A stretch of 64,000 nt of DNA from Octopus sinensis (lineage: Eukaryota), in assembly GCF_006345805.1 (NCBI RefSeq), contig NC_043009.1, positions 8,990,001 to 9,054,000 on the forward strand. Reading direction: 5' to 3'. Both the position numbers and the translations under genes were made by a program. Numbering within the stretch: the stretch's first letter is position 1; every line of letters begins with the position of its first letter. A model generated the notes under the pieces. The model did no database searches and was not told where the DNA came from. It was given only the letters and a program-made list of their open reading frames with translations. Shown in pieces: positions 8,523 through 64,000 of the stretch.

Positions 8523-8577
<55 letters not shown>

Positions 8578-14606: not shown

Positions 14607-14674
<68 letters not shown>

Positions 14675-14677
<3 letters not shown>

Positions 14678-40343: not shown

Positions 40344-40567
40344 TAGGTGCAGGCATGACTAGGTACAGGTATGTCTAGATGCAGATATGGCTAGGTTCAG
40401 GCATGGCTTGATGCTAGCATAGCTAGGTGCTGGTGTGGCTAAGTGCAGATACGGCTAGGTGCAAGCAAGGCTTGGTGCAGGTATGGCTTGGTGTAGGTAT
40501 GACTCGGTACAGGCATGGATTGGTGCCAGCATGGCTTGATGCAGGCATGGCTAGGTGCAGGCATGGC
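40344..40567 (+). repeat. 16-bp minisatellite (~14 copies) running into a SINE family A head (to about 40690)
   Basis: Unit taggtgcaggcatggc; the last unit continues as ...atggctgtgtgg. Confidence 0.85.
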
Positions 40568-41252
40568 TGTGTGGTTAAAAAGCTTGGGTACAGTCCCCTC
40601 TGCATGGCACCTTGGGCAAGTGTTTTCTTCTATAGTCCTAAACTGACTAAAACCTCATGAGTGAAGTTGATAGATGGAAACTGAAAAGCTCACGTGTAAG
40701 TGTGTGTGTGTGTGTGTGTGTGTTTGTGTCTCCTGTCCTAAACCTTACATGATAGTTGTAAAACGATTGTCACCGTCATACAAGCGGTGTTGCTCATTTC
40801 CAATATTCTGTATAAAATGGGTCTGGCCATGGGGAAGCATTATCTTGCTTAGAAACAGGTGAGGGCTGGCAACATGAAGGGCATCTCACCATAGAAAAAA
40901 ATCTACCCAATAAACCATATTTGAACCATGCAAGCAAGGAAAAGTGAATGTTAAAATGATGACGACAATGATGATGATGATGATCACACACACACACACA
41001 CACACACGCGTGCATGCACACATACGCGTGCATGCACATACACACACGCACACACACACGCACACGCATGCACACACGCACACGTGCGTGCACAGTGTAC
41101 TTCATTGGAAATTTGATCATAAAAGAATTAATGGCGTTTCAGTCGTTTAAAAGCCTGGGTTACTGATCGAAAGAGCAGGAATCAATGATACACGGCATGA
41201 TAGATAATATATGAAACACCTGATGTCCCACTTATCGTACCACAGCCCTATC

Positions 41253-41539: not shown

Positions 41540-41927
41540 TCCATGCTAGATAATATTAATATATATAAATATATATATGTGTGTGTATATATATATATAA
41601 TAATATATTATATATATATAATATATATACATATATATAACTATATTATACCAATATATATATATATAATACATATATAGAAATATAATATATACATAGA
41701 TATATATATTAATATATATATATACATATATTATATATATATATACATAATATATATATATATATAACATATATATATATATACATATACATATATATAT
41801 ATATACATATTACATTTATTATACACTAAATATATATATATATATACAATATATATATATACATATAATATATATATACATATACATATATATATATATA
41901 TACATATATTATATATATATATAATTA

Positions 41928-41959
<32 letters not shown>

Positions 41960-42012
41960 AAATATATATATATAATATCTATATATACATATATATATAT
42001 ATATACATATAT

Positions 42013-42044
<32 letters not shown>

Positions 42045-42266
42045 CATATATAACGGGAAGCTTTATGAAAATAACAAAAACAAAAACGACGAAGGCAGGT
42101 GAAAACAAACGACAATTGTATTAGTATGGCGATCAGGAAATATAAATAAAAACAAGTCTTTAAACGTTTCGAGCCTACGCTCTTCAACAGAAAGATACAC
42201 AGAGAGAGAAAAAACAGAAAAACACAGGAAAGAAGGAGGAAAAAAAATGCGGTGCAGTGCTATAGT

Positions 42267-42297
<31 letters not shown>

Positions 42298-42337
42298 GGA
42301 TATATATATAGTATATAGATATATATGATATATAGAT

Positions 42338-42372
<35 letters not shown>

Positions 42373-42373
42373 C

Positions 42374-42422
<49 letters not shown>

Positions 42423-42856
42423 ATACAATATATATAATTATAATACAATATATATTATAATATATTACATATATATATATATATAATATATATAATTATA
42501 TAAAAGGGCTTAGTAAAATAAATTACTTTGCCGCATAACTGAACTCATTAGAAATACAGCGCTAAAAACGTTTTTAAGCTATTTCTAATATTAAAGAAAA
42601 ATCTCTCTCATAATAGTGTTTGCTGTATATATATTATATATATACATATATATTATTATATATAATCTCTCTCATATATAGTGTTTGCATATATATATAT
42701 AATATACATATAATATATATATACATATATATAATATATATACATATAATATATATATACACATATATATATAATATAACATATATATATATATATATTA
42801 CACATATATTATTATATATATAATACATATATATATAATAATATATACATATATAT

Positions 42857-42900
<44 letters not shown>

Positions 42901-43006
42901 TATTATATATATAACACATATATATATATAACATTATATATATATATTATACATATATATAATATAACATATATTATATAGTATATATATACATATATTA
43001 TTAATA
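41540..43006. repeat. Degenerate (TA)n field with embedded repeat fragments (42050-42265, 42500-42625)
   Basis: Directly visible; it explains the Y/I-rich ORFs. Confidence 0.95.
42156..42195 (-). ncRNA. Putative minimal type I hammerhead ribozyme, A6U variant
   Basis: tcttt-CTGTTGA-a-GAGC(gtag)GCTC-GAAA-CGT-T-t-aaaga. Confidence 0.5.
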
Positions 43007-46000
43007 TGTCTGTCCGTAAAAAACAAGTGATCTCAAGATAAGAAATCTTTGAACTTTAATTCATCCGTTCTCTATTTTATTATTATTATTTATTAATTAT
43101 ATTATTCTGATCCCCCTAGTCGCCACTCTGTTTACTATTTCAGCCGCCTCGCCTCGTTTTGCATATTCTGTATAATTCACTAGTTATCGTTATTGATATT
43201 TTAAGATCTATCTCCCTTATAGAAATTGGCTGCCGATTCTTCGCGGGGGTTTTTCTTTTCTCTCCCTTCTCTCCCCCTCTTGTTACATTGTCGTCTGTCT
43301 GGACCCTCTCTTCCTACCACCCGCCATGGCTAGCATACTTAAGCTAGTAAAATGCCTCATTCTTGATTCCGAATTCCTTTTGCCAAGTCTGTCCGTAAAC
43401 GAAGTGATCTCAAGATAAGAAATCTTTGAACTTTAATTCATCCGTATCTCTATTTATTATTATTTATTATTAATTATTATTATTCTGATCCCCCTAGTCG
43501 CCACTCTGTTTACTATTTCAGCCTCGCCTCGCCTCGTTTTGCATTCTGTATAATTCATAGTTATCGTTATTGATATTTTAAGATCTATCTCCCTTATAGA
43601 AATTGGCTGCCGATTCTTCGCGGGGGTTTTTCTTTTCTCTTTTCCCTTCTCTCCCCTCTTGTTACATTGTCGTCTGTCTGGACTCCTCTCTTCCTACCAC
43701 CCGCCATGGCTATGCATACTAAGCTAGTAAAATGCCTCATTCTTGATTCCGAATTCCTTTTGCCAAGTCTGTCCGTAAACGAAGTGATCTCAAGATAAGA
43801 AATCTTTGAACTTTAATTCATCCGTATCTCTATTTATTATTATTATTTATTAATTATATTATTCTGATCCCCCTAGTCGCCACTCTGTTTACTATTTCAG
43901 CCTCGCCTCGCCTCGTTTTGCATATTCTGTATAATTCACTAGTTATCGTTATTGATATTTTAAGATCTATCTCCCTTATAGAAATTGGCTGCCGATTCTT
44001 CGCGGGGTTTTTCTTTTCTCTTCCCTCTCTCCCCCTCTTGTTACATTGTCGTCTGTCTGGACTCCTCTCTTTCCTACCACCCGCCATGGCTATGCATACT
44101 TAAGCTAGTAAAATGCCTCATTCTTGATTCCGAATTCTTTTGCCAAGTTGTCCGTAACGAAGAAGTGATCTCAAGATAAGAAATCTTTGAACTTTATTCA
44201 TCCGTATCTCTATTTATTATTATTATTTATTAATTATTATTCTGATCCCCCTAGTCGCCACTCTGTTTACTATTTCAGCCTCGCCTCGCCTCGTTTTGCA
44301 TATTCTGTATAATTCACTAGTTATCGTTATTGATATTTTAAGATCTATCTCCCTTATAGAAATTGGCTGCGATTTTCGCGGGGGTTTTTTCTTTTTCTCT
44401 TCCCTTCTCTCCCCTCTTGTTACATTGTCGTCTGTCTGGACTCCTCTCTTCCTACCCCCCGCCATGGCTATGCTACTTAAGCTAGTAAAATGCCTCATTC
44501 TTGATCCGAATTCCTTTTTGCCAAGTCTGTCCGTAACGAAAGTGATCTCAAGATAAGAAATCTTTGAACTTTAATTCATCCGTATCTCTATTTATTATTA
44601 TTATTTATTATTATTATTATTCTGATCCCCCTAGTCGCCACTCTGTTTACTATTTCAGCCTCGCCTCGCCTCGTTTGCATATTCTGTATAATTCACTAGT
44701 TATCGTTATTGATATTTTAAGATCTATCCCTTATAGAAATTGGCTGCCGATTCTTCGCGGGGTTTTTCTTTTCTCTTCCCTTCTCTCCCCCTCTTGTTAC
44801 ATTGTCGTCTGTCTGGACTCCTCTCTTCCTACCACCCGCCATGGCTATGCATACTTAAGCTAGTAAAATGCCTCATCTTGATTCCGAATTCCTTTTGCCA
44901 AGTCTGTCCGTAAACGAAGTGATCTCAAGATAAGAAATCTTTGAACTTAATTCATCCGTATCTCTATTTATTATTATTATTTATTAATTATTATTATTCT
45001 GATCCCCTAGTCGCCACTCTGTTTACTATTTCAGCCTCGCCTCGCCTCGTTTTGCATATTCTGTATAATTCATAGTTATCGTTATTGATATTTTAAGATC
45101 TATCTCCCTTATAGAAATTGGCTGCCGATTCTTCGCGGGGTTTTTCTTTTCTCTTCCCTTCTCTCCCCTCTTGTTACATTGTCGTCTGTCTGGACTCCTC
45201 TCTTCCTACCACCCGCCATGGCTATGCATACTTAAGCTAGTAAAATGCCTCATTCTTGATTCCGAATTCCTTTTGCCAAGTCTGTCCGTAAACGAAGTGA
45301 TCTCAAGATAAGAAATCTTTGAACTTTAATTCATCCGTATCTCTATTTATATTATTATTTATTAATTATATTATTCTGATCCCCCTAGTCGCCACTCTGT
45401 TTACTATTTCAGCCTCGCTCGCCTCGTTTTGATATTCTGTATAATTCACTAGTTATCGTTATTGATATTTTAAGATCTATCTCCTTATAGAAATTGGCTG
45501 CCGATTCTTCGCGGGGTTTTTCTTTTCTCTTCCCTTCTCTCCCCCTCTTGTTACATTGTCGTCTGTCTGGACTCTCTCTTCCTACCACCCGCCATGGCTA
45601 TGCATACTTAAGCTAGTAAAATGCCTCATTCTTGATTCCGAATTCCTTTTGCCAAGTCGTGTCCGTAAACGAAGTGATCTCAAGATAAGAAATCTTTGAA
45701 CTTTAATTCATCCGTATCTCTATTTATTATTATTATTTATTAATTATTATTATTCTGATCCCCCTAGTCGCCACTCTGTTTACTATTTCAGCCTCGCCTC
45801 GCCTCGTTTTGCATATTCTGTATAATTCACTAGTTATCGTTATTGATATTTTTAAGATCTATCTCCCTTATAGAAATTGGCTGCCGATTCTTCGCGGGGT
45901 TTTTTTTCTCTTCCCTTCTCTCCCCTCTTGTTACATGTCGTCTGTCTGGACTCCTCTCTTTCCTACCACCGCCATGGCTATGCATACTTAAGCTAGTAAA

Positions 46001-49000
46001 ATGCCTCATCTTGATTCCGAATTCCTTTGCCAGTCTGTCCGTAAAACGAAGTGATCTCAAGATAAGAATCTTTGAACTTTAATTCATCCGTATCTCTATT
46101 TATTATTATTATTTATTAATTATTATTATTCTGATCCCCCCTAGTCGCCACTCTGTTTACTTTCAGCCTCGCCTCGCCTCGTTTTGCATATTCTGTATAA
46201 TTCACTAGTTATCGTTATTGATATTTTAAGATCTATCTCCCTTATAGAAATTGGCTGCCGATTCTTCGCGGGTTTTTCTTTTCTCTCCCTTCTCTCCCCC
46301 TCTTGTTACATTGTCGTCTGTCTGGACTCCTCTCTTCCTACCACCCGCCATGGCTATGCATACTTAAGCTAGTAAAATGCCTCATTCTTGATTCCGAATT
46401 CCTTTTGCCAAGTCTGTCCGTAAACGAAGTGATCTCAAGATAAGAAATCTTTGAACTTTAATTCATCCGTATCTATTTATTATTATATTATTTATTAATT
46501 ATTATTATTCTGATCCCCCTAGTCGCCACTCTGTTTACTATTTCAGCCTCGCCTCGCCTCGTTTTGCATATTCTGTATAATTCACTAGTTATCGTTATTG
46601 ATTTTAAGATCTATCTCCCTTATAGAAATTGGCTGCCGATTCTTCGCGGGGTTTTTCTTTTCTCTTCCTTCTCTCCCCCTCTTGTTACATTGTCGTCTGT
46701 CTGGACTCCTCTCTTCCTACCACCGCCATGGCTATGCATACTTAAGCTAGTAAAATGCCTCATTCTTGATTCCGAATTCCTTTTGCCAAGTCTGTCCGTA
46801 AACGAAGTGATCTCAAGATAAGAAATCTTTGAACTTTAATTCATCCGTATCTCTATTATTATTATTATTTATTAATTATTATTATTCTGATCCCCCTAGT
46901 CGCCACTCTGTTTACTATTTCAGCCTCGCCTCGCCTCGTTTTGCATATTCTGTATAATTCACTAGTTATCGTTATTGATATTTTAAGATCTATCTCCCTT
47001 ATAGAAATTGGCTGCCGATTCTTCGGGGGGTTTTTCTTTTCTCTTCCTTCTCTCCCCCTCTTGTTACATTGTCGTCTGTCTGGACTCCTCTCTTCCTACC
47101 ACCCGCCATGGCTATGCATACTTAAGCTAGTAAAATGCCTCATTCTTGATTCCGAATTCCTTTTGCCAAGTCTGTCCGTAAACGAAGTGATCTCAAGATA
47201 AGAAATCTTTGAACTTTAATTCATCCGTATCTCTATTTATTATTATTATTTATTAATTATTATTATTCTGATCCCCCTAGTCGCCACTCTGTTTACTATT
47301 TCAGCCTCGCCTCGCCTCGTTTTGCATATTCTGTATAATTCACTAGTTATCGTTATTGATATTTTAAGATCTATCTCCCTTATAGAAATTGGCTGCCGAT
47401 TCTTCGCGGGGGGTTTTTCTTTTCTCTTCCCTTTCTCCCCCTCTTGTTACATTGTCGTCTGTCTGGACTCCTCTCTTCCTACCACCCGCCATGGCTATGC
47501 ATACTTAAGCTAGTAAAATGCCTCATTCTTGATTCCGAATTCCTTTTGCCAAGTCTGTCCGTAAACGAAGTGATCTCAAGATAAGAAATCTTTGAACTTT
47601 AATTCATCGTATCTCTATTTATTATTATATTTATTAATTATTATTATTCTGATCCCCCTAGTCGCCACTCTGTTTACTATTTCAGCCTCGCCTCGCCTCG
47701 TTTTGCATATTCTGTATAATTCACTAGTTATCGTTATTGATATTTTAAGATCTATCTCCCTTATAGAAATTGGCTGCCGATTCTTCGCGGGGTTTTTTTT
47801 CTTTTCTCTTCCCTTCTCTCCCCCTCTTGTTACATTGTCGTCTGTCTGGACTCCTCTCTTTCCTACCACCCGCCATGGCTATGCATACTTAAGCTAGTAA
47901 AATGCCTCATTCTTGATTCCGAATTCCTTTTGCCAAGTCTGTCCGTAAACGAAGTGATCTCAAGATAAGAAATCTTTGAACTTTAATTCATCCGTATCTC
48001 TATTTATTATTATTATTTATTAATTATTATTATTCTGATCCCCCTAGTCGCCACTCTGTTTACTATTTCAGCCTCGCCTCGCCTCGTTTTGCATATTCTG
48101 TATAATTCACTAGTTATCGTTATTGATATTTTAAGATCTATCTCCCTTATAGAAATTGGCTGCCGATTCTTCGCGGGGTTTTTTTTTTCTTCCCTTCTCT
48201 CCCCCTCTTGTTACATTGTCGTCTGTCTGGACTCCTCTCTTCCTACCACCCGCCATGGCTATGCATACTTAAGCTAGTAAAATGCCTCATTCTTGATTCC
48301 GAATTCCTTTTGCCAAGTCTGTCCGTAAACGAAGTGATCTCAAGATAAGAAATCTTTGAACTTTAATTCATCCGTATCTCTATTTATATTATTATTTATT
48401 AATTATTATTATTCTGATCCCCCTAGTCGCCACTCTGTTTACTATTTCAGCCTCGCCTCGCCTCGTTTTGCATATTCTGTATAATTCACTAGTTATCGTT
48501 ATTGATATTTTAAGATCTATCTCCCTTATAGAAATTGGCTGCCGATTCTTCGCGGGGTTTTTCTTTTCTCTTCCCTTCTCTCCCCCTCTTGTTACATTGT
48601 CGTCTGTCTGGACTCCTCTCTTCCTACCACCCCGCCATGGCTATGCATACTTAAGCTAGTAAAATGCCTCATTCTTGATTCCGAATTCCTTTTGCCAAGT
48701 CTGTCCGTAAACGAAGTGATCTCAAGATAAGAAATCTTTGAACTTTAATTCATCCGTATCTCTATTTATTATTATTATTTATTAATTATTATTATTCTGA
48801 TCCCCTAGTCGCCACTCTGTTTACTATTTCAGCCTCGCCTCGCCTCGTTTTGCATATTCTGTATAATTCACTAGTTATCGTTATTGATATTTTAAGATCT
48901 ATCTCCCTTATAGAAATTGGCTGCCGATTCTTCGCGGGGTTTTCTTTTCTCTTCCTTCTCTCCCCCTCTTGTTACATTGTCGTCTGTCTGGACTCCTCTT

Positions 49001-52000
49001 TCCTACCACCCGCCATGGCTATGCATACTTAAGCTAGTAAAATGCCTCATTCTTGATTCCGAATTCCTTTTGCCAAGTCTGTCCGTAAACGAAAGTGATC
49101 TCAAGATAAGAAATCTTTGAACTTTAATTCATCCGTATCTCTATTTATTATTATTATTTATTAATTATTATTATCTGATCCCCTAGTCGCCACTCTGTTT
49201 ACTATTTCAGCCTCGCCTCGCCTCGTTTTGCATATTCTGTATAATTCACTAGTTATCGTTATTGATATTTAAGAAGATCTCCCTTATAGAAATTGGCTGC
49301 CGATTCTTCGCGGGGTTTTTCTTTTCTTTCCCTTCTCTCCCCCTCTTGTTACATTGTCGTCTGTCTGGACTCCTCTCTTCCTACCACCCGCCATGGCTAT
49401 GCATACTTAAGCTAGTAAAATGCCTCATTCTTGATTCCGAATTCCTTTTGCCAAGTCTGTCCGTAAACGAAGTGATCTCAAGATAAGAAATCTTTGAACT
49501 TTAATTCATCCGTATCTCTATTTATTATTATTATTTATTAATTATTATTATTCTGATCCCCCTAGTCGCCACTCTGTTTACTATTTCAGCCTCGCCTCGC
49601 CTCGTTTTGCATATTCTGTATAATTCACTAGTTATCGTTATTGATATTTTAAGATCTATCTCCCTTATAGAAATTGGCTGCCGATTCTTCGCGGGGTTTT
49701 TCTTTTCTCTTCCCTTCTCTCCCCCTCTTGTTACATTGTCGTCTGTCTGGACTCCTCTCTTCCTACCACCCGCCATGGCTATGCATACTTAAGCTAGTAA
49801 AATGCCTCATTCTTGATTCCGAATTCCTTTTGCCAAGTCTGTCCGTAAACGAAGTGATCTCAAGATAAGAAATCTTTGAACTTTAATTCATCCGTATCTC
49901 TATTTATTATTATTATTTATTAATTATTATTATTCTGATCCCCCTAGTCGCCACTCTGTTTACTATTTCAGCCTCGCCTCGCCTCGTTTTGCATATTCTG
50001 TATAATTCACTAGTTATCGTTATTGATATTTTAAGATCTATCTCCCTTATAGAAATTGGCTGCCGATTCTTCGCGGGGTTTTTCTTTTCTCTTCCTTCTC
50101 TCCCCTCTTGTTACATTGTCGTCTGTCTGGACTCCTCTCTTCCTACCACCCGCCATGGCTATGCATACTTAAGCTAGTAAAATGCCTCATTCTTGATTCC
50201 GAATTCCTTTTGCCAAGTCTGTCCGTAAACGAAGTGATCTCAAGATAAGAAATCTTTGAACTTTAATTCATCCGTATCTCTATTTATTATTATTATTTAT
50301 TAATTATTATTATTCTGATCCCCCTAGTCGCCACTCTGTTTACTATTTCAGCCTCGCCTCGCCTCGTTTTGCATATTCTGTATAATTCACTAGTTATCGT
50401 TATTGATATTTTAAGATCTATCTCCCTTATAGAAATTGGCTGCCGATTCTTCGCGGGGTTTTTCTTTTCTCTTCCCTTCTCTCCCCCTCTTGTTACATTG
50501 TCGTCTGTCTGGACTCCTCTCTTCCTACCACCCGCCATGGCTATGCATACTTAAGCTAGTAAAATGCCTCATTCTTGATTCCGAATTCCTTTTGCCAAGT
50601 CTGTCCGTAAACGAAGTGATCTCAAGATAAGAAATCTTTGAACTTTAATTCATCCGTATCTCTATTTATTATTATTATTTATTAATTATTATTATTCTGA
50701 TCCCCCTAGTCGCCACTCTGTTTACTATTTCAGCCTCGCCTCGCCTCGTTTTGCATATTCTGTATAATTCACTAGTTATCGTTATTGATATTTTAAGATC
50801 TATCTCCCTTATAGAAATTGGCTGCCGATTCTTCGCGGGGTTTTTCTTTTCTCTTCCCTTCTCTCCCCCTCTTGTTACATTGTCGTCTGTCTGGACTCCT
50901 CTCTTCCTACACCCGCCATGGCTATGCATACTTAAGCTAGTAAAATGCCTCATTCTTGATTCCGAATTCCTTTGCCAAGTCTGTCCGTAAACGAAGTGAT
51001 CTCAAGATAAGAAATCTTTGAACTTTAATTCATCCGTATCTCTATTTATTATTATTATTTATTAATTATTATTATTCTGATCCCCCTAGTCGCCACTCTG
51101 TTTACTATTTCAGCCTCGCCTCGCCTCGTTTTGCATATTCTGTATAATTCACTAGTTATCGTTATTGATATTTAAGATCTATCTCCCTTATAGAAATTGG
51201 CTGCCGATTCTTCGCGGGGTTTTCTTTTCTCTTCCCTTCTCTCCCCTCTTGTTACATTGTCGTCTGTCTGGACTCCTCTCTTCCTACCACCCCGCCATGG
51301 CTATGCATACTTAAGCTAGTAAAATGCCTCATTCTTGATTCCGAATTCCTTTTGCCAAGTCTGTCCGTAAACGAAGTGATCTCAAGATAAGAAATCTTTG
51401 AACTTTAATTCATCCGTATCTCTATTTATTATTATTATTTATTAATTATTATTATTCTGATCCCCCTAGTCGCCACTCTGTTTACTATTTCAGCCTCGCC
51501 TCGCCTCGTTTTGCATATTCTGTATAATTCACTAGTTATCGTTATTGATATTTTAAGATCTATCTCCCTTATAGAAATTGGCTGCCGATTCTTCGCGGGG
51601 TTTTTCTTTTCTCTTCCCTTCTCTCCCCCTCTTGTTACATTGTCGTCTGTCTGGACTCCTCTCTTCCTACCACCCGCCATGGCTATGCATACTTAAGCTA
51701 GTAAAATGCCTCATTCTTGATTCCGAATTCCTTTTGCCAAGTCTGTCCGTAAACGAAGTGATCTCAAGATAAGAAATCTTTGAACTTTAATTCATCCGTA
51801 TCTCTATTATTATTATTATTTATTAATTATTATTATTCTGATCCCCCTAGTCGCCACTCTGTTTACTATTTCAGCCTCGCCTCGCCTCGTTTTGCATATT
51901 CTGTATAATTCACTAGTTATCGTTATTGATATTTTAAGATCTATCTCCCTTATAGAAATTGGCTGCCGATTCTTCGCGGGGTTTTTCTTTCTCTTCCCTT

Positions 52001-55000
52001 CTCTCCCCCTCTTGTACATTGTCGTCTGTCTGGACTCCTCTCTTCCTACCACCCGCCATGGCTATGCATACTTAAGCTAGTAAAATGCCTCATTCTTGAT
52101 TCCGAATTCCTTTTGCCAAGTCTGTCCGTAAACGAAGTGATCTCAAGATAAGAAATCTTTGAACTTTAATTCATCCGTATCTCTATTTATTATTATTATT
52201 TATTAATTATTATTATTCTGATCCCCCTAGTCGCCACTCTGTTTACTATTTCAGCCTCGCCTCGCCTCGTTTTGCATATTCTGTATAATTCACTAGTTAT
52301 CGTTATTGATATTTTAAGATCTATCTCCCTTATAGAAATTGGCTGCCGATTCTTCGCGGGGTTTTTCTTTTTCTTCCCTTCTCTCCCCCTCTTGTTACAT
52401 TGTCGTCTGTCTGGACTCCTCTCTTCCTACCACCCGCCATGGCTATGCATACTTAAGCTAGTAAAATGCCTCATTCTTGATTCCGAATTCCTTTTGCCAA
52501 GTCTGTCCGTAAACGAAGTGATCTCAAGATAAGAAATCTTTGAACTTTAATTCATCCGTATCTCTATTTATTATTTTATTTATAATTATTATTCTGATCC
52601 CCCTAGTCGCCACTCTGTTTACTATTTCAGCCTCGCCTCGCCTCGTTTTGCATATTCTGTATAATTCACTAGTTATCGTTATTGATATTTTAAGATCTAT
52701 CTCCCTTATAGAAATTGGCTGCCGATTCTTCGCGGGGTTTTCTTTTCTCTTCCTTCTCTCCCCTCTTGTTACATTGTCGTCTGTCTGGACTCCTCTCTTC
52801 CTACCACCCGCCATGGCTATGCATACTTAAGCTAGTAAAATGCCTCATTCTTGATTCCGAATTCCTTTTGCCAAGTCTGTCCGTAAACGAAGTGATCTCA
52901 AGATAAGAAATCTTTGAACTTTAATTCATCCGTATCTCTATTTATTATTATTATTTATTAATTATTATTATTCTGATCCCCCTAGTCGCCACTCTGTTTA
53001 CTATTTCAGCCTCGCCTCGCCTCGTTTTGCATATTCTGTATAATTCACTAGTTATCGTTATTGATATTTTAAGATCTATCTCCCTTATAGAAATTGGCTG
53101 CCGATTCTTCGCGGGGTTTTTCTTTTCTCTTCCCTTCTCTCCCCCTCTTGTTACATTGTCGTCTGTCTGGACTCCTCTCTTCCTACCACCCGCCATGGCT
53201 ATGCATACTTAAGCTAGTAAAATGCCTCATTCTTGATTCCGAATTCCTTTTGCCAAGTCTGTCCGTAAACGAAGTGATCTCAAGATAAGAAATCTTTGAA
53301 CTTTAATTCATCCGTATCTCTATTTATTATTATTATTTATTAATTATTATTATTCTGATCCCCCTAGTCGCCACTCTGTTTACTATTTCAGCCTCGCCTC
53401 GCCTCGTTTTGCATATTCTGTATAATTCACTAGTTATCGTTATTGATATTTTAAGATCTATCTCCCTTATAGAAATTGGCTGCCGATTCTTCGCGGGGTT
53501 TTTCTTTTCTCTTCCCTCTCTCCCCCTCTTGTTACATTGTCGTCTGTCTGGACTCCTCTCTTCCTACCACCCGCCATGGCTATGCATACTTAAGCTAGTA
53601 AAATGCCTCATTCTTGATTCCGAATTCCTTTTGCCAAGTCTGTCCGTAAACGAAGTGATCTCAAGATAAGAAATCTTTGAACTTTAATTCATCCGTATCT
53701 CTATTTATTATTATTATTTATTAATATTATTATTTGATCCCCCTAGTCGCCACTCTGTTTACTATTTCAGCCTCGCCTCGCCTCGTTTTGCATATTCTGT
53801 ATAATTCACTAGTTATCGTTATTGATATTTTAAGATCTATCTCCCTTATAGAAATTGGCTGCCGATTCTTCGCGGGGTTTTTCTTTTCTCTTCCCTTCTC
53901 TCCCCCTCTTGTTACATTGTCGTCTGTCTGGACCTCTCTTCCTACCACCCGCCATGGCTATGCATACTTAAGCTAGTAAAATGCCTCATTCTTGATTCCG
54001 AATCCTTTTGCCAAGTCTGTCCGTAAACGAAGTGATCTCAAGATAAGAAATCTTTGAACTTTAATTCATCCGTATCTCTATTTATTATTATTATTTATTA
54101 ATTATTATTATTCTGATCCCCCTAGTCGCCACTCTGTTTACTATTTCAGCCTCGCCTCGCCTCGTTTTGCATATTCTGTATAATTCACTAGTTATCGTTA
54201 TTGATATTTTAAGATCTATCTCCCTTATAGAAATTGGCTGCCGATTCTTCGCGGGGTTTTTCTTTTCTCTTCCCTTCTCTCCCCTCTTGTTACATTGTCG
54301 TCTGTCTGGACTCCTCTCTTCCTACCACCCGCCATGGCTATGCATACTTAAGCTAGTAAAATGCCTCATTCTTGATTCCGAATTCCTTTTGCCAAGTCTG
54401 TCCGTAAACGAAGTGATCTCAAGATAAGAAATCTTTGAACTTTAATTCATCCGTATCTCTATTTATTATTATTATTTATTAATTATTATTATTCTGATCC
54501 CCTAGTCGCCACTCTGTTTACTATTTCAGCCTCGCCTCGCCTCGTTTTGCATATTCTGTATAATTCACTAGTTATCGTTATTGATATTTTAAGATCTATC
54601 TCCCTTATAGAAATTGGCTGCCGATTCTTCGCGGGGTTTTTTTCTCTTCCTTCTCTCCCCCTCTTGTTACATTGTCGTCTGTCTGGACTCCTCTCTTCCT
54701 ACCACCCGCCATGGCTATGCATACTTAAGCTAGTAAAATGCCTCATTCTTGATTCCGAATTCCTTTTGCCAAGTCTGTCCGTAAACGAAGTGATCTCAAG
54801 ATAAGAAATCTTTGAACTTTAATTCATCCGTATCTCTATATTATTATTATTTATTAATTATTATTATTCTGATCCCCCTAGTCGCCACTCTGTTTACTAT
54901 TTCAGCCTCGCCTCGCCTCGTTTTGCATATTCTGTATAATTCACTAGTTATCGTTATTGATATTTTAAGATCTATCTCCCTTATAGAAATTGGCTGCCGA

Positions 55001-58000
55001 TTCTTCGCGGGGTTTTTCTTTTCTCTTCCCTTCTCTCCCCCTCTTGTTACATTGTCGTCTGTCTGGACTCCTCTCTTCCTACCACCCGCCATGGCTATGC
55101 ATACTTAAGCTAGTAAAATGCCTCATTCTTGATTCCGAATTCCTTTGCCAAGTCTGTCCGTAAACGAAGTGATCTCAAGATAAGAAATCTTTGAACTTTA
55201 ATTCATCCGTATCTCTATTTATTATTATTATTTATTAATTATTATTATTCTGATCCCCCTAGTCGCCACTCTGTTTACTATTTCAGCCTCGCCTCGCCTC
55301 GTTTTGCATATTCTGTATAATTCACTAGTTATCGTTATTGATATTTTAAGATCTATCTCCCTTATAGAAATTGGCTGCCGATTCTTCGCGGGGTTTTCTT
55401 TTCTCTTCCCTTTCTCCCCCTCTTGTTACATTGTCGTCTGTCTGGACTCCTCTCTTCCTACCACCCGCCATGGCTATGCATACTTAAGCTAGTAAAATGC
55501 CTCATTCTTGATTCCGAATTCCTTTTGCCAAGTCTGTCCGTAAACGAAGTGATCTCAAGATAAGAAATCTTTGAACTTTAATTCATCCGTATCTCTATTT
55601 ATTATTATTATTATTAATTATTATTATTCTGATCCCCCTAGTCGCCACTCTGTTTACTATTTCAGCCTCGCCTCGCCTCGTTTTGCATATTCTGTATAAT
55701 TCACTAGTTATCGTTATTGATATTTAAGATCTATCTCCCTTATAGAAATTGGCTGCCGATTCTTCGCGGGGTTTTTCTTTTCTCTTCCCTTCTCTCCCCC
55801 TCTTGTTACATTGTCGTCTGTCTGGACTCCTCTCTTCCTACCACCCGCCATGGCTATGCATACTTAAGCTAGTAAAATGCCTCATTCTTGATTCCGAATT
55901 CCTTTTGCCAAGTCTCTGTCCGTAAACGAAGTGATCTCAAGATAAGAAATCTTTGAACTTTAATTCATCCGTATCTCTATTATTATTATTATTTATTAAT
56001 TATTATTATTCTGATCCCCCTAGTCGCCACTCTGTTTACTATTTCAGCCTCGCCTCGCCTCGTTTTGCATATTCTGTATAATTCACTAGTTATCGTTATT
56101 GATATTTTAAGATCTATCTCCCTTATAGAAATTGGCTGCCGATTCTTCGCGGGGTTTTTTTTCTCTCCCTTCTCTCCCCCTCTTGTTACATTGTCGTCTG
56201 TCTGGACTCCTCTCTTCCTACCACCCGCCATGGCTATGCATACTTAAGCTAGTAAAAATGCCTCATTCTTGATTCCGAATTCCTTTTGCCAAGTCTGTCC
56301 GTAAACGAAGTGATCTCAAGATAAGAAATCTTTGAACTTTAATTCATCCGTATCTCTATTTATTATTATTATTATTAATTAATTATTATTATCTGATCCC
56401 CCTAGTCGCCACTCTGTTTACTATTTCAGCCTCGCCTCGCCTCGTTTTGCATATTCTGTATAATTCACTAGTTATCGTTATTGATATTTAAGATCTATCT
56501 CCCTTATAGAAATTGGCTGCCGATTCTTCGCGGGGTTTTTCTTTTCTCTTCCCTTCTCTCCCCCCTCTTGTTACATTGTCGTCTGTCTGGACTCCTCTCT
56601 TCCTACCACCCGCCATGGCTATGCATACTTAAGCTAGTAAAATGCCTCATTCTTGATTCCGAATTCCTTTTGCCAAGTCTGTCCGTAAACGAAGTGATCT
56701 CAAGATAAGAATCTTTGAACTTTAATTCATCCGTATCTCTATTTATTATTATTATTTATTAATTATTATTATTCTGATCCCCTAGTCGCCACTCTGTTTA
56801 CTATTTCAGCCTCGCCTCGCCTCGTTTTGCATATTCTGTATAATTCACTAGTTATCGTTATTGATATTTTAAGATCTATCTCCCTTATAGAAATTGGCTG
56901 CCGATTCTTCGCGGGGTTTTTCTTTTCTCTTCCCTTCTCTCCCCCTCTTGTTACATTGTCGTCTGTCTGGACTCCTCTCTTCCTACCACCCGCCATGGCT
57001 ATGCATACTTAAGCTAGTAAAATGCCTCATTCTTGATTCCGAATCCTTTTGCCAAGTCTGTCCGTAAACGAAGTGATCTCAAGATAAGAAATCTTTGAAC
57101 TTTAATTCATCCGTATCTCTATTTATTATTATTTATTAATTATTATTATTCTTCCCCCTAGTCGCCACTCTGTTTACTATTTCAGCCTCGCCTCGCCTCG
57201 TTTTGCATATTCTGTATAATTCACTAGTTATCGTTATTGATATTTTAAGATCTATCTCCCTTATAGAAATTGGCTGCCGATTCTTCGCGGGGTTTTTCTT
57301 TTCTCTTCCCTTCTCTCCCCCTCTTGTTACATTGTCGTCTGTCTGGACTCCTCTCTTTCCTACCACCCGCCATGGCTATGCATACTTAAGCTAGTAAAAT
57401 GCCTCATTCTTGATTCCGAATTCCTTTTGCCAAGTCTGTCCGTAAACGAAGTGATCTCAAGATAAGAAATCTTTGAACTTTAATTCATCCGTATCTCTAT
57501 TTATTATTATTATTTATTAATTATTATTATTCTGATCCCCTAGTCGCCACTCTGTTTACTATTCAGCCTCGCCTCGCCTCGTTTTGCATATTCTGTATAA
57601 TTCACTAGTTATCGTTATTGATATTTTAAGATCTATCTCCCTTATAGAAATTGGCTGCCGATTCTTCGCGGGGTTTTTCTTTTTCTCTTCCCTTCTCTCC
57701 CCCTCTTGTTACATTGTCGTCTGTCTGGACTCCTCTCTTCCTACCACCCGCCATGGCTATGCATACTTAAGCTAGTAAAATGCCTCATTCTTGATTCCGA
57801 ATTCCTTTTGCCAAGTCTGTCCGTAAACGAAGTGATCTCAAGATAAGAAATCTTTGAACTTTAATTCATCCGTATCTCTATTTATTATTATTATTTATTA
57901 ATTATTATTTTCTGATCCCCCTAGTCGCCACTCTGTTACTATTTCAGCCTCGCCTCGCCTCGTTTTGCATATTCTGTATAATTCACTAGTTATCGTTATT

Positions 58001-61000
58001 GATATTTTAAGATCTATCTCCCTTATAGAAATTGGCTGCCGATTCTTCGCGGGGTTTTTCTTTTCTCTTCCTTCTCTCCCCCTCTTGTTACATTGTCGTC
58101 TGTCTGGACTCCTCTCTTCCTACCACCCGCCATGGCTATGCATACTTAAGCTAGTAAAATGCCTCATTCTTGATTCCGAATTCCTTTTGCCAAGTCTGTC
58201 GTAAACGAAGTGATCTCAAGATAAGAAATCTTTGAACTTTAATTCATCCGTATCTCTATTTATTATTATTATTTATTAATTATTATTATTCTGATCCCCC
58301 TAGTCGCCACTCTGTTTACTATTTCAGCCTCGCCTCGCCTCGTTTTGCATATTCTGTATAATTCACTAGTTATCGTTATTGATATTTAAGATCTATCTCC
58401 CTTATAGAAATTGGCTGCCGATTCTTCGCGGGGTTTTTTTCTTTTCTCTCCCTTCTCTCCCCCTCTTGTTACATTGTCGTCTGTCTGGACTCCTCTCTTC
58501 CTACCACCCGCCATGGCTATGCATACTTAAGCTAGTAAAATGCCTCATTCTTGATTCCGAATTCCTTTTGCCAGTCTGTCCGTAAACGAAGTGATCTCAA
58601 GATAAGAAATCTTTGAACTTTAATTCATCCGTATCTCTATTATTATTATTATTTATTAATTATTATTATTCTGATCCCCTAGTCGCCACTCTGTTTACTA
58701 TTTCAGCCTCGCCTCGCCTCGTTTTGCATATTCTGTATAATTCACTAGTTATCGTTATTGATATTTTAAGATCTATCTCCCTTATAGAAATTGGCTGCCG
58801 ATTCTTCGCGGGGTTTTTCTTTTCTCTTCCCTTCTCTCCCCCTCTTGTTACATTGTCGTCTGTCTGGACTCCTCTCTTCCTACCACCCGCCATGGCTATG
58901 CATACTTAAGCTAGTAAAATGCCTCATTCTTGATTCCGAATTCCTTTTGCCAAGTGTCCGTAAACGAAGTGATCTCAAGATAAGAAATCTTTGAACTTTA
59001 ATTCATCCGTATCTCTATTTATTATTATTATTTATAATTATTATTATTCTGATCCCCTAGTCGCCACTCTGTTTACTATTTCAGCCTCGCCTCGCCTCGT
59101 TTTGCATATTCTGTATAATTCACTAGTTATCGTTATTGATATTTTAAGATCTATCTCCCTTATAGAAATTGGCTGCCGATTCTTCGCGGGGTTTTTCTTT
59201 TCTCTTCCCTTCTCTCCCCCTCTTGTTACATTGTCGTCTGTCTGGACTCTCCTCTCTTCCTACCACCACCCGCCATGGCTATGCATACTTAAGCTAGTAA
59301 AATGCCTCATTCTTGATTCCGAATTCCTTTTGCCAAGTCTGTCCGTAAACGAAGTGATCTCAAGATAAGAAATCTTTGAACTTTAATTCATCCGTATCTC
59401 TATTTTTATTATTATTTATTAATTATTATTATTCTGATCCCCTAGTCGCCACTCTGTTTACTATTTCAGCCTCGCCTCGCCTCGTTTTGCATATTCTGTA
59501 TAATTCACTAGTTATCGTTATTGATATTTTAAGATCTATCTCCCTTATAGAAATTGGCTGCCGATTCTTCGCGGGGTTTTCTTTTCTCTTCCCTTCTCTC
59601 CCCCCTTGTTACATTGTCGTCTGTCTGGACTCCTCTCTTCCTACCACCCGCCATGGCTATGCATACTTAAGCTAGTAAAATGCCTCATTCTTGATTCCGA
59701 ATTCCTTTTGCCAAGTCTGTCCGTAAACGAAGTGATCTCAAGATAAGAAATCTTTGAACTTTAATTCATCCGTATCTTATTATTATTATTTATTAATTAT
59801 ATTATTCTGATCCCCCTAGTCGCCACTGTTTACTATTTCAGCCTCGCCTCGCCTCGTTTTGCATATTCTGTATAATTCACTAGTTATCGTTATTGATATT
59901 TTAAGATCTATCTCCCTTATAGAAATTGGCTGCCGATTCTTCGCGGGGTTTTTTCTTTTCTTCCCTTCTCTCCCCTCTTGTTACATTGTCGTCTGTCTGG
60001 ACTCCTCTCTTCCTACCACCCGCCATGGCTATGCATACTTAAGCTAGTAAAATGCCTCATTCTTGATTCCGAATTCCTTTTGCCAAGTCTGTCCGTAAAC
60101 GAAGTGATCTCAAGATAAGAAATCTTGAACTTTAATTCATCCGTATCTCTATTTATTATTATTATTATTAATTATTATTATTCTGATCCCCTAGTCGCCA
60201 CTCTGTTTACTATTTCAGCCTCGCCTCGCCTCGTTTTGCATATTCTGTATAATTCACTAGTTATCGTTATTGATATTTTAAGATCTATCTCCTTATAGAA
60301 ATTGGCTGCCGATTCTTCGCGGGTTTTTCTTTTCTCTTCCTTCTCTCCCCTCTTGTTACATTGTCGTCTGTCTGGACTCCTCTCTTCCTACCACCCGCCA
60401 TGGCTATGCATACTTAAGCTAGTAAAATGCCTCATTCTTGATTCCGAATTCCTTTTGCCAAGTCTGTCCGTAAACGAAGTGATCTCAAGATAAGAAATCT
60501 TTGAACTTTAATTCATCCGTATCTCTATTTATTATTATTATTTATTAATTATTATTATTCTGATCCCCCTAGTCGCCACTCTGTTTACTATTTCAGCCTC
60601 GCCTCGCCTCGTTTTGCATATTCTGTATAATTCACTAGTTATCGTTATTGATATTTTAAGATCTATCTCCCTTATAGAAATTGGCTGCCGATTCTTCGCG
60701 GGGTTTTTCTTTTCTTTCCCTTCTCTCCCCCTCTTGTTACATTGTCGTCTGTCTGGACTCCTCTCTTCCTACCACCCGCCATGGCTATGCATACTTAAGC
60801 TAGTAAAATGCCTCATTCTTGATTCCGAATTCCTTTTGCCAAGTCTGTCCGTAAACGAAGTGATCTCAAGATAAGAAATCTTTGAACTTTAATTCATCCG
60901 TATCTCTATTTATTATTATTATTTATTAATTATTATTATTCTGATCCCCCTAGTCGCCACTCTGTTTACTATTTCAGCCTCGCCTCGCCTCGTTTTGCAT

Positions 61001-62597
61001 ATTCTGTATAATTCACTAGTTATCGTTATTGATATTTTAAGATCTATCTCCCTTATAGAAATTGGCTGCCGATTCTTCGGGGGGTTTTCTTTTCTCTTCC
61101 CTTCTCTCCCCTCTTGTTACATTGTCGTCTGTCTGGACTCCTCTCTTCCTACCACCCGCCATGGCTATGCATACTTAAGCTAGTAAAATGCCTCATTCTT
61201 GATTCCGAATTCCTTTTGCCAAGTCTGTCCGTAAACGAAGTGATCTCAAGATAAGAAATCTTTGAACTTTAATTCATCCGTATCTCTATTTATTATTATT
61301 ATTTATTAATTATTATTATTCTGATCCCCCTAGTCGCCACTCTGTTTACTATTTCAGCCTCGCCTCGCCTCGTTTTGCATATTCTGTATAATTCACTAGT
61401 TATCGTTATTGATATTTTAAGATCTATCTCCCTATAGAAATTGGCTGCCGATTCTTCGCGGGGTTTTTCTTTTCTCTTCCCTTCTCTCCCCTCTTGTTAC
61501 ATTGTCGTCTGTCTGGACTCCTCTTCCTACCACCCGCCATGGCTATGCATACTTAAGCTAGTAAAATGCCTCATTCTTGATTCCGAATTCCTTTTGCCAA
61601 GTCTGTCCGTAAACGAAGTGATCTCAAGAAAGAAATCTTTGAACTTTAATTCATCCGTATCTCTATTTATTATTATTATTTATTAATTATTATTTTCTGA
61701 TCCCCCTAGTCGCCACTCTGTTTACTATTTCAGCCTCGCCTCGCCTCGTTTTGCATATTCTGTATAATTCACTAGTTATCGTTATTGATATTTTAAGATC
61801 TATCTCCCTTATAGAAATTGGCTGCCGATTCTTCGCGGGGTTTTTCTTTTTCTCTTCCTTCTCTCCCCCTCTTGTTACATGTCGTCTGTCTGGACTCCTC
61901 TCTTCCTACCACCCGCCATGGCTATGCATACTTAAGCTAGTAAAATGCCTCATTCTTGATTCCGAATTCCTTTTGCCAAGTCTGTCCGTAAACGAAGTGA
62001 TCTCAAGATAAGAAATCTTTGAACTTTAATTCATCCGTATCTCTATTATTATTATTATTATTAATTATTATTATTCTGATCCCCCTAGTCGCCACTCTGT
62101 TTACTATTTCAGCCTCGCCTCGCCTCGTTTTGCATATTCTGTATAATTCACTAGTTATCGTTATTGATATTTTAAGATCTATCTCCCTTATAGAAATTGG
62201 CTGCCGATTCTTCGCGGGGTTTTTTTTCTTTCTCTTCCCTTCTCTCCCCTCTTGTTACATTGTCGTCTGTCTGGACTCCTCTCTTCCTACCACCCGCCAT
62301 GGCTATGCATACTTAAGCTAGTAAAATGCCTCATTCTTGATTCCGAATTCCTTTTGCCAAGTCTGTCCGTAAACGAAGTGATCTCAAGATAAGAAATCTT
62401 TGAACTTTAATTCATCCGTATCTCTATTTATTATTATTATTAATTATTATTATTATCTGATCCCCCTAGTCGCCACTCTGTTTACTATTTCAGCTCGCCT
62501 CGCCTCGTTTTGCATATTCTGTATAATTCACTAGTTATCGTTATTGATATTTTAAGATCTATCTCCCTTATAGAAATTGGCTGCCGATTCTTCGCGG
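43007..62597. repeat. Tandem satellite array, 382-bp consensus unit, about 51.6 copies
   Basis: The anchor gtccgtaaa recurs from 43012 to 62365 with periods of 380-382 bp where measured. Differences are almost all 1-bp indels in homopolymer or (ATT)n runs. Confidence 0.98.
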
Positions 62598-62673
62598 CGC
62601 GCCGCCCTACCCACCCCCACCACCAATACCGGATATCTCTATTTGCTCCAACTATACCGGATGTCGTTTTTCT

Positions 62674-63255
62674 CCCACCACCATTATAGGTGTCTACTCT
62701 TTGAACCCCCTCTTCAATACGCTATTTCACCATGCATTACCCCTCTCTCGATATCCTACGTTCTACTTGCCTAGAACCTGTCCTCTGGACCACCCCTCCC
62801 ACTGGTGCTCACCCCTCCCACTGGTGCTCCCCTATATTTCTGCATCCCCCACCACCATTATGGGTGTCTACTCTTTGAACCCCCCCCCTCTCAATACGCT
62901 ATTTCACCATGCATTACCCCTCTCTCGATATCCTACGTTCTACTTGCCTAGAACCTGTCCTCTGAACCACCCCTCCCACTGGTGCCCACCCCTCCCACTG
63001 GTGCTCCCCTATATTTCTGCACCCCACCACCATTATAGGTGTCTACTCTTTGAACCCCCCTCTTCAATACGCTGCTCCCCTATATTTCTGCACCCCCCAC
63101 CACCATTATAGGTGTCTACTCTTTGAACCCCCCTCTTCAATACGCTATTTCACATGCATTACCCCTCTCTCGATATCCTACGTTCTACTTGACTAGTACC
63201 TGTCCTCTGAACCACCCCTCCCACTGGTGCTCCCCTATATTTCTGCACCCCCCCC
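62674..63255. repeat. ~175-bp C-rich tandem repeat, about 3.3 copies
   Basis: Units start near 62674, 62848, 63022 (internally deleted) and 63095, with an internal 18-bp sub-repeat cacccctcccactggtgc. Confidence 0.9.
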
Positions 63256-63490
63256 ATAAAAAGCACCATCCGAACGTGGCCGATGCCAGACCCCTCTGGC
63301 ACCTGTGCAGGTGGCACGTAAAAAACACCCACTACACTCGCGGAGTGGTTGGCGTTAGGAAGGGCATCCAGCTGTAGAAACACTGCCAGACTAGACTGGA
63401 GCCTGGGGCAGTCCCGAGCTCCCCCGACCCCGGTCGAAAACCGTCCAACCGTGCTAGCGCGGAAAACGGACGTTAAACGATGATGATGAT
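63256..63490 (+). mobile_element. RTE-type 3' tail
   Basis: Tail consensus ending ttaaacgatgatgatgat. Confidence 0.85.
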
Positions 63491-63648
63491 ACATAGATAT
63501 ATATATATACATATATATTATAATATATATATATTATATATATATACATATATTATATAATATTATATATATATATATATATAGTTATATATATATAATA
63601 TATTATATATATATCTATATAATATATATACATATATATAATATATAC

Positions 63649-63699
<51 letters not shown>

Positions 63700-63906
63700 C
63701 AATATATATATATTATACATATATATATATAGACAGATATATATAATATAGAGTACCCGAATATATATATACAATCATATATATATATACATATAATATA
63801 CATATATACATATATATATATGCTTATATATACATCTATATATATATTACATATATACATATAATATAACACATATTACATAATCTATAATACATATATA
63901 TAATAT

Positions 63907-63937
<31 letters not shown>

Positions 63938-64000
63938 TATATCTATATAATATATATATACTATACATATATATAGATGTAATATATATATATACATATA
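63491..64000. repeat. Degenerate (TA)n microsatellite
   Basis: Directly visible. Confidence 0.95.

What the first reader, a model, noticed from the sequence alone, without database searches (positions are those of the whole stretch)
43007..62597. ~19.6-kb extremely homogeneous 382-bp tandem array, possibly intronic
Seen: about 51 full units plus a partial one. Substitutions are very rare, and variation is nearly all single-base indels in runs, which looks like unpolished long-read error over near-identical units. The unit is complex: an (ATT)n tract, (gcctc)3, a long pyrimidine tract, and more CpG than the flanks. It has no match elsewhere in the window, and I recognise no rRNA, tRNA, 5S or snRNA in it. 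Inference: very recent amplification or strong concerted evolution. The unit length is near two nucleosome repeats. If the STIL-like gene continues to the right, the array lies inside its intron.
Basis: partly seen in the sequence, partly recalled or inferred. Interest (0 to 1): 0.7.

Follow-up and report, generated by a model that had tools for sequence, protein, structure and literature searches.

The report
Young 382-bp satellite array, octopus-type genome
This is a real but ordinary non-coding satellite: about 51.6 near-identical copies of a 382-bp unit in repeat-rich DNA that looks octopus-like, and almost all differences between copies look like long-read sequencing errors.

Summary
Window 43008-62597 holds 51 full copies and one 237-bp partial copy of a complex 382-bp unit.

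- **Variation:** 13 substitutions and about 186 indel events in 19.35 kb. Indels are deletion-biased about 4:1, and their rate rises from 0.3% per single base to 22% per 5-base run. Shared variants are not clustered in neighbouring units, so this looks like consensus error rather than divergence.
- **Content:** the unit has no ORF running through it, no Pfam, protein, Rfam or tRNA match, no stable RNA fold and no internal half-unit repeat. It has no other copy in the window.
- **CpG:** observed/expected is 1.11 in the array and 0.44 in the flank.
- **Setting:** long (AT)n-rich blocks lie on both sides. The array starts and ends abruptly, in mid-unit on the right.
- **Lineage:** a ~234-bp SINE (at least 13 copies) and a LINE tail 75% identical to an Octopus vulgaris protein point to an octopod genome. 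Satellites there cover 3.1% of the genome in 80 families that have not been described individually.

Best reading: a very young or strongly homogenised satellite array with no sign of function. True copy number and true homogeneity need the reads. I found no STIL-like gene, so an intronic position is untested. Interest is low.

The parts
43008..62597 (.). Tandem array of the 382-bp unit: 51 full units plus a partial unit (62361-62597, consensus positions 1-240). The + strand is 66% pyrimidine.
   Evidence: TRF; unit-by-unit alignment; composition
49455..49836 (+). Unit 18, one of four units identical to the 382-bp consensus; used as the reference copy.
   Evidence: Exact identity asserted; per-unit table
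49519..49552 (+). ATT-rich tract of the reference unit (unit positions 65-98).
   Evidence: the only part of the unit with matches elsewhere in the window, all at (ATT)n microsatellites
49589..49603 (+). (GCCTC)3 of the reference unit (unit positions 135-149).
49697..49729 (+). 33-nt pure polypyrimidine tract (unit positions 243-275) containing a perfect 15-nt mirror repeat, TCTCTTCCCTTCTCT. Triplex (H-DNA) potential is my inference and was not tested.
41559..42998 (.). Left flank: a 1.4-kb (AT)n/(ATAC)-type low-complexity block with two non-AT islands (42040-42275 and 42500-42625). It abuts the first unit directly.
   Evidence: TRF; sequence; composition and k-mers
62598..63254 (+). Right flank: a 76-bp unique piece followed by a C-rich 177-bp repeat (TRF: 2.3 copies at 62674-63073, with further partial copies to about 63254). 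It is unrelated to the 382-bp unit and occurs nowhere else in the window.
63255..63488 (-). One copy of a ~234-bp SINE present at least 13 times in the window. Its head abuts the right (AT)n block.
63489..64000 (.). Right (AT)n/(ATAC)-type block, with the same composition and top k-mers as the left block. It runs off the end of the window.

Best explanation
The array is a non-coding satellite DNA array in a transposon-dense, microsatellite-rich stretch of an animal genome, most likely an octopod. A complex 382-bp monomer is repeated head to tail about 51.6 times.

**Shown**
- The copies are essentially identical.
- The residual differences have the signature of long-read consensus error, not of mutation.
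- The monomer encodes no protein, no known RNA and no stable fold.
- The array has sharp ends and sits between two long (AT)n-type blocks.
- Its CpGs are undecayed, whereas the surrounding DNA is CpG-depleted.

**Inferred**
- The array was amplified very recently, or is kept homogeneous by frequent unequal sister-chromatid exchange or replication slippage.
- It holds a non-integer number of units, it stops in mid-unit on the right, and its edge units are not degenerate. I therefore think it more likely arrived as, or was cut from, an already repetitive piece than that it grew from a local single-copy sequence. That piece could be a fragment of another array or a rolling-circle product of a circular monomer, captured at a break in the fragile (AT)n tract.
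- It most likely has no organismal function and behaves as neutral or selfish DNA.
- The high CpG content reflects youth and/or lack of germline methylation.
For: - **Array and statistics:**
- **Error-like variation:** 13 substitutions against about 186 indel events; deletions outnumber insertions about 4:1; indel rate is 0.3% per single base and 22% per 5-base run. None of the 13 substitutions affects a CpG.
- **No higher-order structure:** recurrent variants are not enriched in neighbouring units at lags 1-6 (P = 0.23-0.86).
- **Non-coding:** 382 = 3n+1, and stops occur in all six frames. The two longest unit ORFs have no hit among 5.8 billion proteins and none in Pfam.
- **No RNA signal:** no Rfam or tRNA match. 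Both strands fold less stably than their shuffles, z +1.67 and +0.80.
- **No internal repeat:**
- **CpG:** observed/expected 1.11 in the array against 0.44 in the flank, which also shows TG/CA excess of 1.3. SINE copies range from 0.24 to 0.91.
- **Flanks:** the AT blocks on the two sides are alike. No terminal inverted or direct repeat encloses the block.
- **Lineage:** the best-identity hit of a LINE-tail ORF (75%) is an Octopus vulgaris protein.
- **Satellites are common there:** a repeat annotation of O. vulgaris lists 87 Mb (3.12%) of satellites in 80 families (PMC13282606 supplement).
- **General background:** homogenisation by unequal crossover or rolling-circle amplification, and euchromatic satellite arrays including those of molluscs, are reviewed in PMC12692304.
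Against: - There is no comparative or read-level evidence. I found no second copy of the unit in any searchable collection, so genome-wide abundance, presence in sister species and real copy number are unknown.
- Consensus building inside an array can erase real variants, so 'essentially identical' is an upper bound on homogeneity.
- Error counts differ along the array: 98, 33 and 68 events in the three thirds. This could be uneven polishing, or partly real edge divergence.
- The capture or rolling-circle origin rests only on boundary geometry.
- The octopod assignment rests on one 75%-identity LINE hit and my memory of the SINE.
Confidence: 0.7

Rival explanations
1. Assembly product. A satellite exists, but its length, its homogeneity or even its placement are artefacts. 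Copy number may be inflated or collapsed, variants may be erased by read correction and polishing, or the block may be mis-joined through the (AT)n low-complexity sequence on both sides.
For: - The error profile shows this stretch is poorly polished long-read consensus.
- Both sides of the 20.5-kb block (array, 177-bp repeat and SINE) are the same kind of (AT)n sequence, which assemblers handle badly.
- Errors are fewest in the middle third of the array, as expected if multi-mapped reads polish the interior.
- At least one public octopus assembly was built from ONT R9.4.1 reads with Illumina and ONT polishing (PMC10700109).
Against: - The junction (AT)n|unit 1, and the junction between the mid-unit end and unique sequence, must each have been present in reads.
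- The right flank is complex, unique sequence.
- This rival changes the numbers, not the nature of the feature.
- It cannot be tested without the reads.
Confidence: 0.2
2. An expanded internal tandem repeat of a transposable element. Examples would be a Helitron-type element, which carries satellite arrays in bivalve molluscs, or a tandem-repeat-containing MITE. The array would then have been delivered by transposition.
For: - Euchromatic satellite arrays of molluscs are often linked to Helitrons and other transposons (PMC12692304).
- The array has sharp ends and lies in AT-rich DNA, the kind of target Helitrons use (my own knowledge).
- Another tandem repeat and a SINE lie directly next to it.
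Against: - No terminal inverted or direct repeats enclose the block.
- The boundaries do not read A|TC...CTRR|T in either orientation (sequence).
- The unit and the 177-bp repeat have no other copy in the window.
- No transposase, Rep or helicase signal was found in the window. Pfam found only RVT_1 near 4.4-5.0 kb.
Confidence: 0.08
3. A functional array. It could be part of a centromere, a source of long non-coding or piRNA transcripts, or a chromatin or regulatory element kept unmethylated and homogeneous by selection.
For: - CpG is not depleted (1.11) in a CpG-depleted neighbourhood.
- Strand asymmetry is strong, and each unit has a 33-nt polypyrimidine mirror-repeat tract.
- The array is extremely homogeneous.
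- I found no description of octopus centromeric DNA in the papers I could search.
Against: - The array is only 19.6 kb and is bounded on both sides by ordinary SINE- and LINE-rich sequence.
- There is no structured-RNA signal, no Rfam match and no CENP-B-box-like motif.
- Youth alone explains both the CpG content and the homogeneity.
Confidence: 0.05

Closest known systems
Satellite DNA arrays dispersed in euchromatin (described in oysters, Tribolium and hemipterans; reviewed in PMC12692304)
   Same: - Head-to-tail non-coding monomers longer than 60 bp.
- A kilobase-scale array embedded among transposons, not a megabase heterochromatic block.
- High homogeneity within the array, as expected from concerted evolution.
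   Different: - Genome-wide copy number, other loci and chromosomal position are unknown.
- No transposon association was detected here, unlike the Helitron-linked oyster satellites.
- Identity among units is higher than usually reported, although part of that may come from consensus building.
The 80 'Satellite' families (87 Mb, 3.12%) in the 2026 Octopus vulgaris repeat annotation (PMC13282606, Supplementary Table 1)
   Same: The same kind of feature, in what is probably the same or a closely related genome. A TRF- and RepeatMasker-based annotation would call this array a satellite.
   Different: I could not test whether this 382-bp unit is one of them.
Centromeric satellites (for example alpha satellite, 171 bp)
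   Same: Tandem, non-coding and homogenised, with a unit length that is a rough multiple of nucleosome spacing.
   Different: - The array is 19.6 kb with both ends in ordinary sequence, and it shows no higher-order repeat.
- There is no CENP-B-box-like motif and no dimeric substructure.
- CENP-A association is untestable here.
Tandem gene clusters (5S rDNA, snRNA, tRNA or histone repeats)
   Same: The unit size of a few hundred bp and the very high identity between units resemble these clusters.
   Different: No RNA gene and no protein domain lies in the unit.

Membership tests
Satellite DNA (tandem non-coding repeat) | Head-to-tail repetition of a monomer longer than about 60 bp over many copies | tested here: met
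   51.6 copies of a 382-bp unit; TRF score 37360; unit-by-unit alignment
Satellite DNA (tandem non-coding repeat) | The monomer does not encode a protein or a known RNA | tested here: met
   Stops in all six frames. No protein hits, no Pfam match, no Rfam or tRNA match, and no fold signal.
Satellite DNA (tandem non-coding repeat) | Family-level abundance: further arrays or copies elsewhere in the genome | not testable with these tools
   Only one 64-kb window is available, and it holds no other copy. No eukaryotic genome collection could be searched. Metagenome, viral and prokaryote scans were negative.
Satellite DNA (tandem non-coding repeat) | Concerted evolution: units more alike within a species than between species | not testable with these tools
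   Within-array identity is close to 100%, but no orthologous array was available for comparison.
Centromeric satellite | Very long arrays, usually with higher-order repeats or at least local variant structure | tested here: not met
   The array is 19.6 kb with both ends in the window. Variants are not clustered at lags 1-6.
Centromeric satellite | Association with CENP-A/CenH3 chromatin | not testable with these tools
   This needs ChIP or CUT&Tag data. A CENP-B-box-like motif is absent, but that motif is not defining outside mammals.
Transposon-borne tandem repeat (Helitron- or MITE-associated, as in bivalves) | The array is enclosed by the element's conserved termini (TIRs, or 5'-TC...CTRR-3' with insertion between A and T) | tested here: not met
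   No inverted or direct repeat links the flanks. The boundary sequences do not fit Helitron ends. The test is weak without other family members.
Tandem RNA or histone gene cluster | Each unit carries the gene | tested here: not met
   Rfam at gathering threshold and in a permissive scan of three units; ARAGORN; Pfam on the unit ORFs
Macrosatellite | Monomer longer than about 500 bp, often composite (definition in PMC12692304) | tested here: not met
   The unit is 382 bp and has no internal sub-repeats.

The most novel reading that the evidence does not exclude
The array is not junk. It would be a germline-unmethylated, selectively homogenised locus, for example a core centromeric repeat or a strand-specific non-coding or piRNA precursor array, in octopods. 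I found no description of centromeric DNA or of individual satellites for that group in the papers I could search. Its undecayed CpGs, strong pyrimidine/purine strand asymmetry and one triplex-prone mirror repeat per unit would then be functional features.
Probability: 0.05. Interest if true: 0.55.

Novelty: new member of a known kind. Interest (0 to 1): 0.2.

Why it matters
On its own it matters little. Tandem satellite arrays are a normal component of animal genomes, and about 3% of an octopus genome is already annotated as satellite.

It has some practical value:
- It marks a stretch where the assembly is poorly polished and the copy number is unreliable.
- It supplies a clean 382-bp consensus that could serve as a FISH probe or a k-mer marker for octopod satellites, which have barely been described.
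- Undecayed CpG inside a CpG-depleted neighbourhood makes it a convenient test case for how fast new repeats become methylated and decay in a cephalopod genome.

Tried and rejected
- **Coding unit:** rejected. There are stops in all frames, and the longest ORFs of both strands hit nothing among 5.8 billion proteins or in Pfam.
- **RNA gene cluster or structured RNA:** rejected.
- **Ancestral ~191-bp dimer, or other internal repeats:** rejected.
- **Higher-order repeat or locally spreading variants:** rejected.
- **Relationship between the unit and the adjacent 177-bp repeat:** none; the alignment score is within shuffles.
- **Transposon envelope around the block:** none found.
- **CENP-B-box-like motif:** none.
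- **Relatives in public collections:**
  - Exact-pattern scans of viral and prokaryote genome contigs, and the first metagenome scan, found nothing.
  - The second metagenome scan found three chance 21-22-mer matches in GC-rich bacterial contigs.
  - These collections hold little or no animal DNA, so the negatives say little.
- **ORF spanning the 177-bp repeat and the SINE:** my third protein search, used to name the lineage, found nothing.
- **STIL-like gene:**
  - Pfam on ORFs of 45 aa or more, both strands of 1-43 kb, gave only RVT_1. The - strand set was filtered for low complexity and for paralogues within the window.
That query is a lead, not a test.
- **Literature:**
  - A search for a printed copy of the SINE sequence found nothing.
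  - Searches for octopus or cephalopod satellite papers found none.
Full report
**1. The observation**

Tandem Repeats Finder reports a single array at 43008-62597 with period 380, 51.6 copies, 97% matches, 2% indels and score 37360. I cut the array into units by semi-global alignment to a majority consensus. This gave 51 full units of 372-384 bp and a last unit (62361-62597) that stops at consensus position 240.

The consensus is 382 bp, and four units (18, 20, 23, 27) are identical to it. It is 38.5% G+C and 66% pyrimidine on the + strand, which explains the constant GC and AT skew across the array.
- an ATT-rich tract at unit positions 65-98;
- (GCCTC)3 at positions 135-149;
- a 33-nt pure pyrimidine tract at positions 243-275, which contains a perfect 15-nt mirror repeat.

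**2. Nature of the variation**

Against the consensus, units 1-51 carry 13 substitutions, about 35 insertion events and about 151 deletion events in 19,349 bases. The indel rate per run per unit rises with homopolymer length: 0.003, 0.015, 0.056, 0.069 and 0.216 for runs of 1, 2, 3, 4 and 5 bases.

Several substitutions sit next to indels and are probably alignment effects. None affects a CpG. The 32 recurrent variants are no more often shared by units 1 to 6 positions apart than in random permutations (P = 0.23-0.86). There is therefore no higher-order repeat and no local spread of variants.

Deletion bias, steep dependence on homopolymer length and random placement are the signature of residual long-read consensus error, not of mutation. 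Event counts in the three thirds of the array are 98, 33 and 68. I read this as uneven polishing, though some real edge divergence cannot be excluded.

One caveat applies. Read correction and polishing within a tandem array pool reads from all units and can erase true private variants. The apparent identity of nearly 100% is therefore an upper bound.

**3. What the unit is not**

- **Not coding.** 382 is 3n+1, and all six frames of a tetramer contain stops. The longest ORFs of the - strand (81 aa) and the + strand (95 aa) hit nothing among 5.8 billion proteins. Four unit ORFs gave nothing meaningful in Pfam.
- **Not an RNA gene.** Rfam finds nothing in the array at gathering thresholds. A permissive scan of three units gave only noise (best E=0.67). 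ARAGORN finds no tRNA.
- **Not a structured RNA.** Both strands fold less stably than dinucleotide shuffles, z +1.67 and +0.80.
- **Not internally repetitive.** There is no internal direct repeat, no similarity between half-units and no ~191-bp periodicity. The 'two nucleosomes' remark is only arithmetic.
- **No centromere motif.** No CENP-B-box-like motif occurs in the window.
- **No other copy here.** Outside the array, only the (ATT)n part of the unit matches anything in the window.

**4. Setting**

The first unit directly follows a 1.4-kb (AT)n/(ATAC)-type block (41559-42998). That block contains two non-AT islands.

On the right, the array stops in mid-unit and continues into these segments:
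- 76 bp of unique C-rich sequence;
- a C-rich 177-bp repeat (62674 to about 63254);
- one copy of a ~234-bp SINE (63255-63488, - strand);
- another (AT)n block with the same composition and top k-mers as the left one.

The 177-bp repeat is unrelated to the 382-bp unit and is unique in the window. No inverted or direct repeat links the two flanks. The junctions do not look like Helitron ends.

Blocks of this AT-rich kind and size occur only around the array in this window.

**5. CpG**

CpG observed/expected is 1.11 in the array. In 1-41558 it is 0.44, and TG and CA are in excess there (1.32 and 1.30). This shows that CpG decay operates in this genome. SINE copies in the window range from 0.24 to 0.91.

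The monomer has therefore not undergone CpG decay. Either it is young or it escapes germline methylation. The sequence cannot distinguish the two.

**6. Lineage and literature**

The window is dense in repeats:
- at least 13 copies of the SINE;
- reverse-transcriptase and LINE-tail fragments;
- many microsatellites.

A LINE-tail ORF (14675-14968) finds its most identical relative (75%) in a protein named 'Hypothetical predicted protein [Octopus vulgaris]', CAI9729969.1. The SINE consensus also matches what I remember of the abundant octopus SINE, but that is memory, not a test. I take the genome to be octopod, with moderate confidence.

In O. vulgaris, SINEs make up about 11.7% of the genome. 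'Satellite' makes up 87.5 Mb (3.12%) in 80 families (PMC13282606 and its Supplementary Table 1). That paper does not describe the families individually. The genome paper, PMC10700109, does not mention satellites, tandem arrays or centromeres at all. The latter assembly was built from ONT R9.4.1 reads polished with Illumina and ONT reads. That chemistry would produce exactly the error profile seen here, but I cannot show that the window comes from that assembly.

Four literature searches for octopus or cephalopod satellites found no description.

**7. Interpretation**

The feature meets the testable defining criteria of satellite DNA: it is tandem, its monomer exceeds 60 bp, and it is non-coding. 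Such arrays are common in euchromatin, including in molluscs. They are kept homogeneous by unequal crossover or rolling-circle amplification (PMC12692304).

Three boundary features bear on its origin:
- the number of units is not an integer;
- the right end is abrupt and falls in mid-unit;
- the edge units are not degenerate.

From these I infer that the array more likely arrived as an already repetitive piece, or was truncated, than that it grew from local single-copy sequence. The surrounding (AT)n tract is a plausible fragile site for such a capture. This step is inference only. I see no evidence of function.

**8. Rivals**

- **Assembly artefact.** Wrong copy number, over-homogenisation or a mis-join through (AT)n cannot be excluded without the reads. 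This would change the numbers, not the nature of the feature.
- **Transposon-borne repeat.** This is not supported by the boundaries, but it can only be tested genome-wide.
- **Functional array.** A centromeric, non-coding-RNA or chromatin role is not excluded. Only the CpG content and the strand asymmetry speak for it, and youth explains the first.

**9. The intronic idea**

I found no STIL-like gene. Pfam on all ORFs of 45 aa or more on the + strand of 1-43 kb gave only RVT_1 near 4.4-5.0 kb. A filtered set of - strand ORFs gave nothing. Short or divergent exons could have been missed, so the array may or may not be intronic.

**10. Verdict**

The feature is an ordinary satellite array in a poorly polished part of a long-read assembly. 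It is a new member of a known kind, and possibly already present in an existing octopus repeat library. Interest is low.

Noticed in passing
window 1431-1537 (-): A full-length U6 snRNA match (101.7 bits, E=2.7e-25) that ends in a T5 run. By my memory of canonical U6, several bases differ in the 5' stem-loop and in the 'CCCCTGCGCAAGG' region. I saw no obvious TATA box in the 100 nt upstream, so it may be a variant copy or a pseudogene.
   Followed up: partly
window 63255-63488 (-) and at least 12 other sites (e.g. 15547-15782, 32141-32373, 30817-31034, 29581-29798): A ~234-bp SINE family in both orientations, 78-95% identical to the local consensus. The copy next to the array keeps the most CpGs (18; observed/expected 0.91), although it is only 88% identical to that consensus.
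   Followed up: partly
window 62598-63254 (+): A second, C-rich tandem repeat of 177 bp lies directly to the right of the array. TRF reports 2.3 copies plus nested 19-bp and 73-bp repeats. It is unrelated to the 382-bp unit, is unique in the window, and its copies differ mainly in C-run length.
   Followed up: partly
window 41559-42998 and 63489-64000: Unusually long (AT)n/(ATAC)-type blocks bracket the array region. The left block has two non-AT islands: 42040-42275, which is purine-rich, and 42500-42625. Nothing of comparable size occurs elsewhere in the window.
   Followed up: partly
window 15055-15507: A 158/159-bp tandem repeat (2.8 copies, 94% matches) lies next to a SINE copy at 15547-15782. 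It shares a short stretch with the SINE.
   Followed up: no
window 7040-7437: A (TACA)n microsatellite of about 103 copies. The window also holds many other long di-, tri- and tetranucleotide repeats, for example (AT)89 at 14498-14674 and (TTA)18 at 8525-8577.
   Followed up: no
window 40344-40568: A 16-bp minisatellite (TAGGTGCAGGCATGGC, 14 copies, 73% matches).
   Followed up: no
window 1693-2045: A 180-bp tandem duplication (2.0 copies, 86% matches) just beside the U6-like gene.
   Followed up: no
window ~4400-5000 (+), 14675-14968 (+), 22400-23005 (+), 39656-40039 (-): Degenerate LINE fragments. There is an RVT_1 match (E=4.4e-9) near 4.4-5.0 kb. Several ORFs look like LINE C-terminal tails, and the one at 14675-14968 is 75% identical to an Octopus vulgaris hypothetical protein. 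No cellular gene was recognised anywhere in 1-43 kb.
   Followed up: partly
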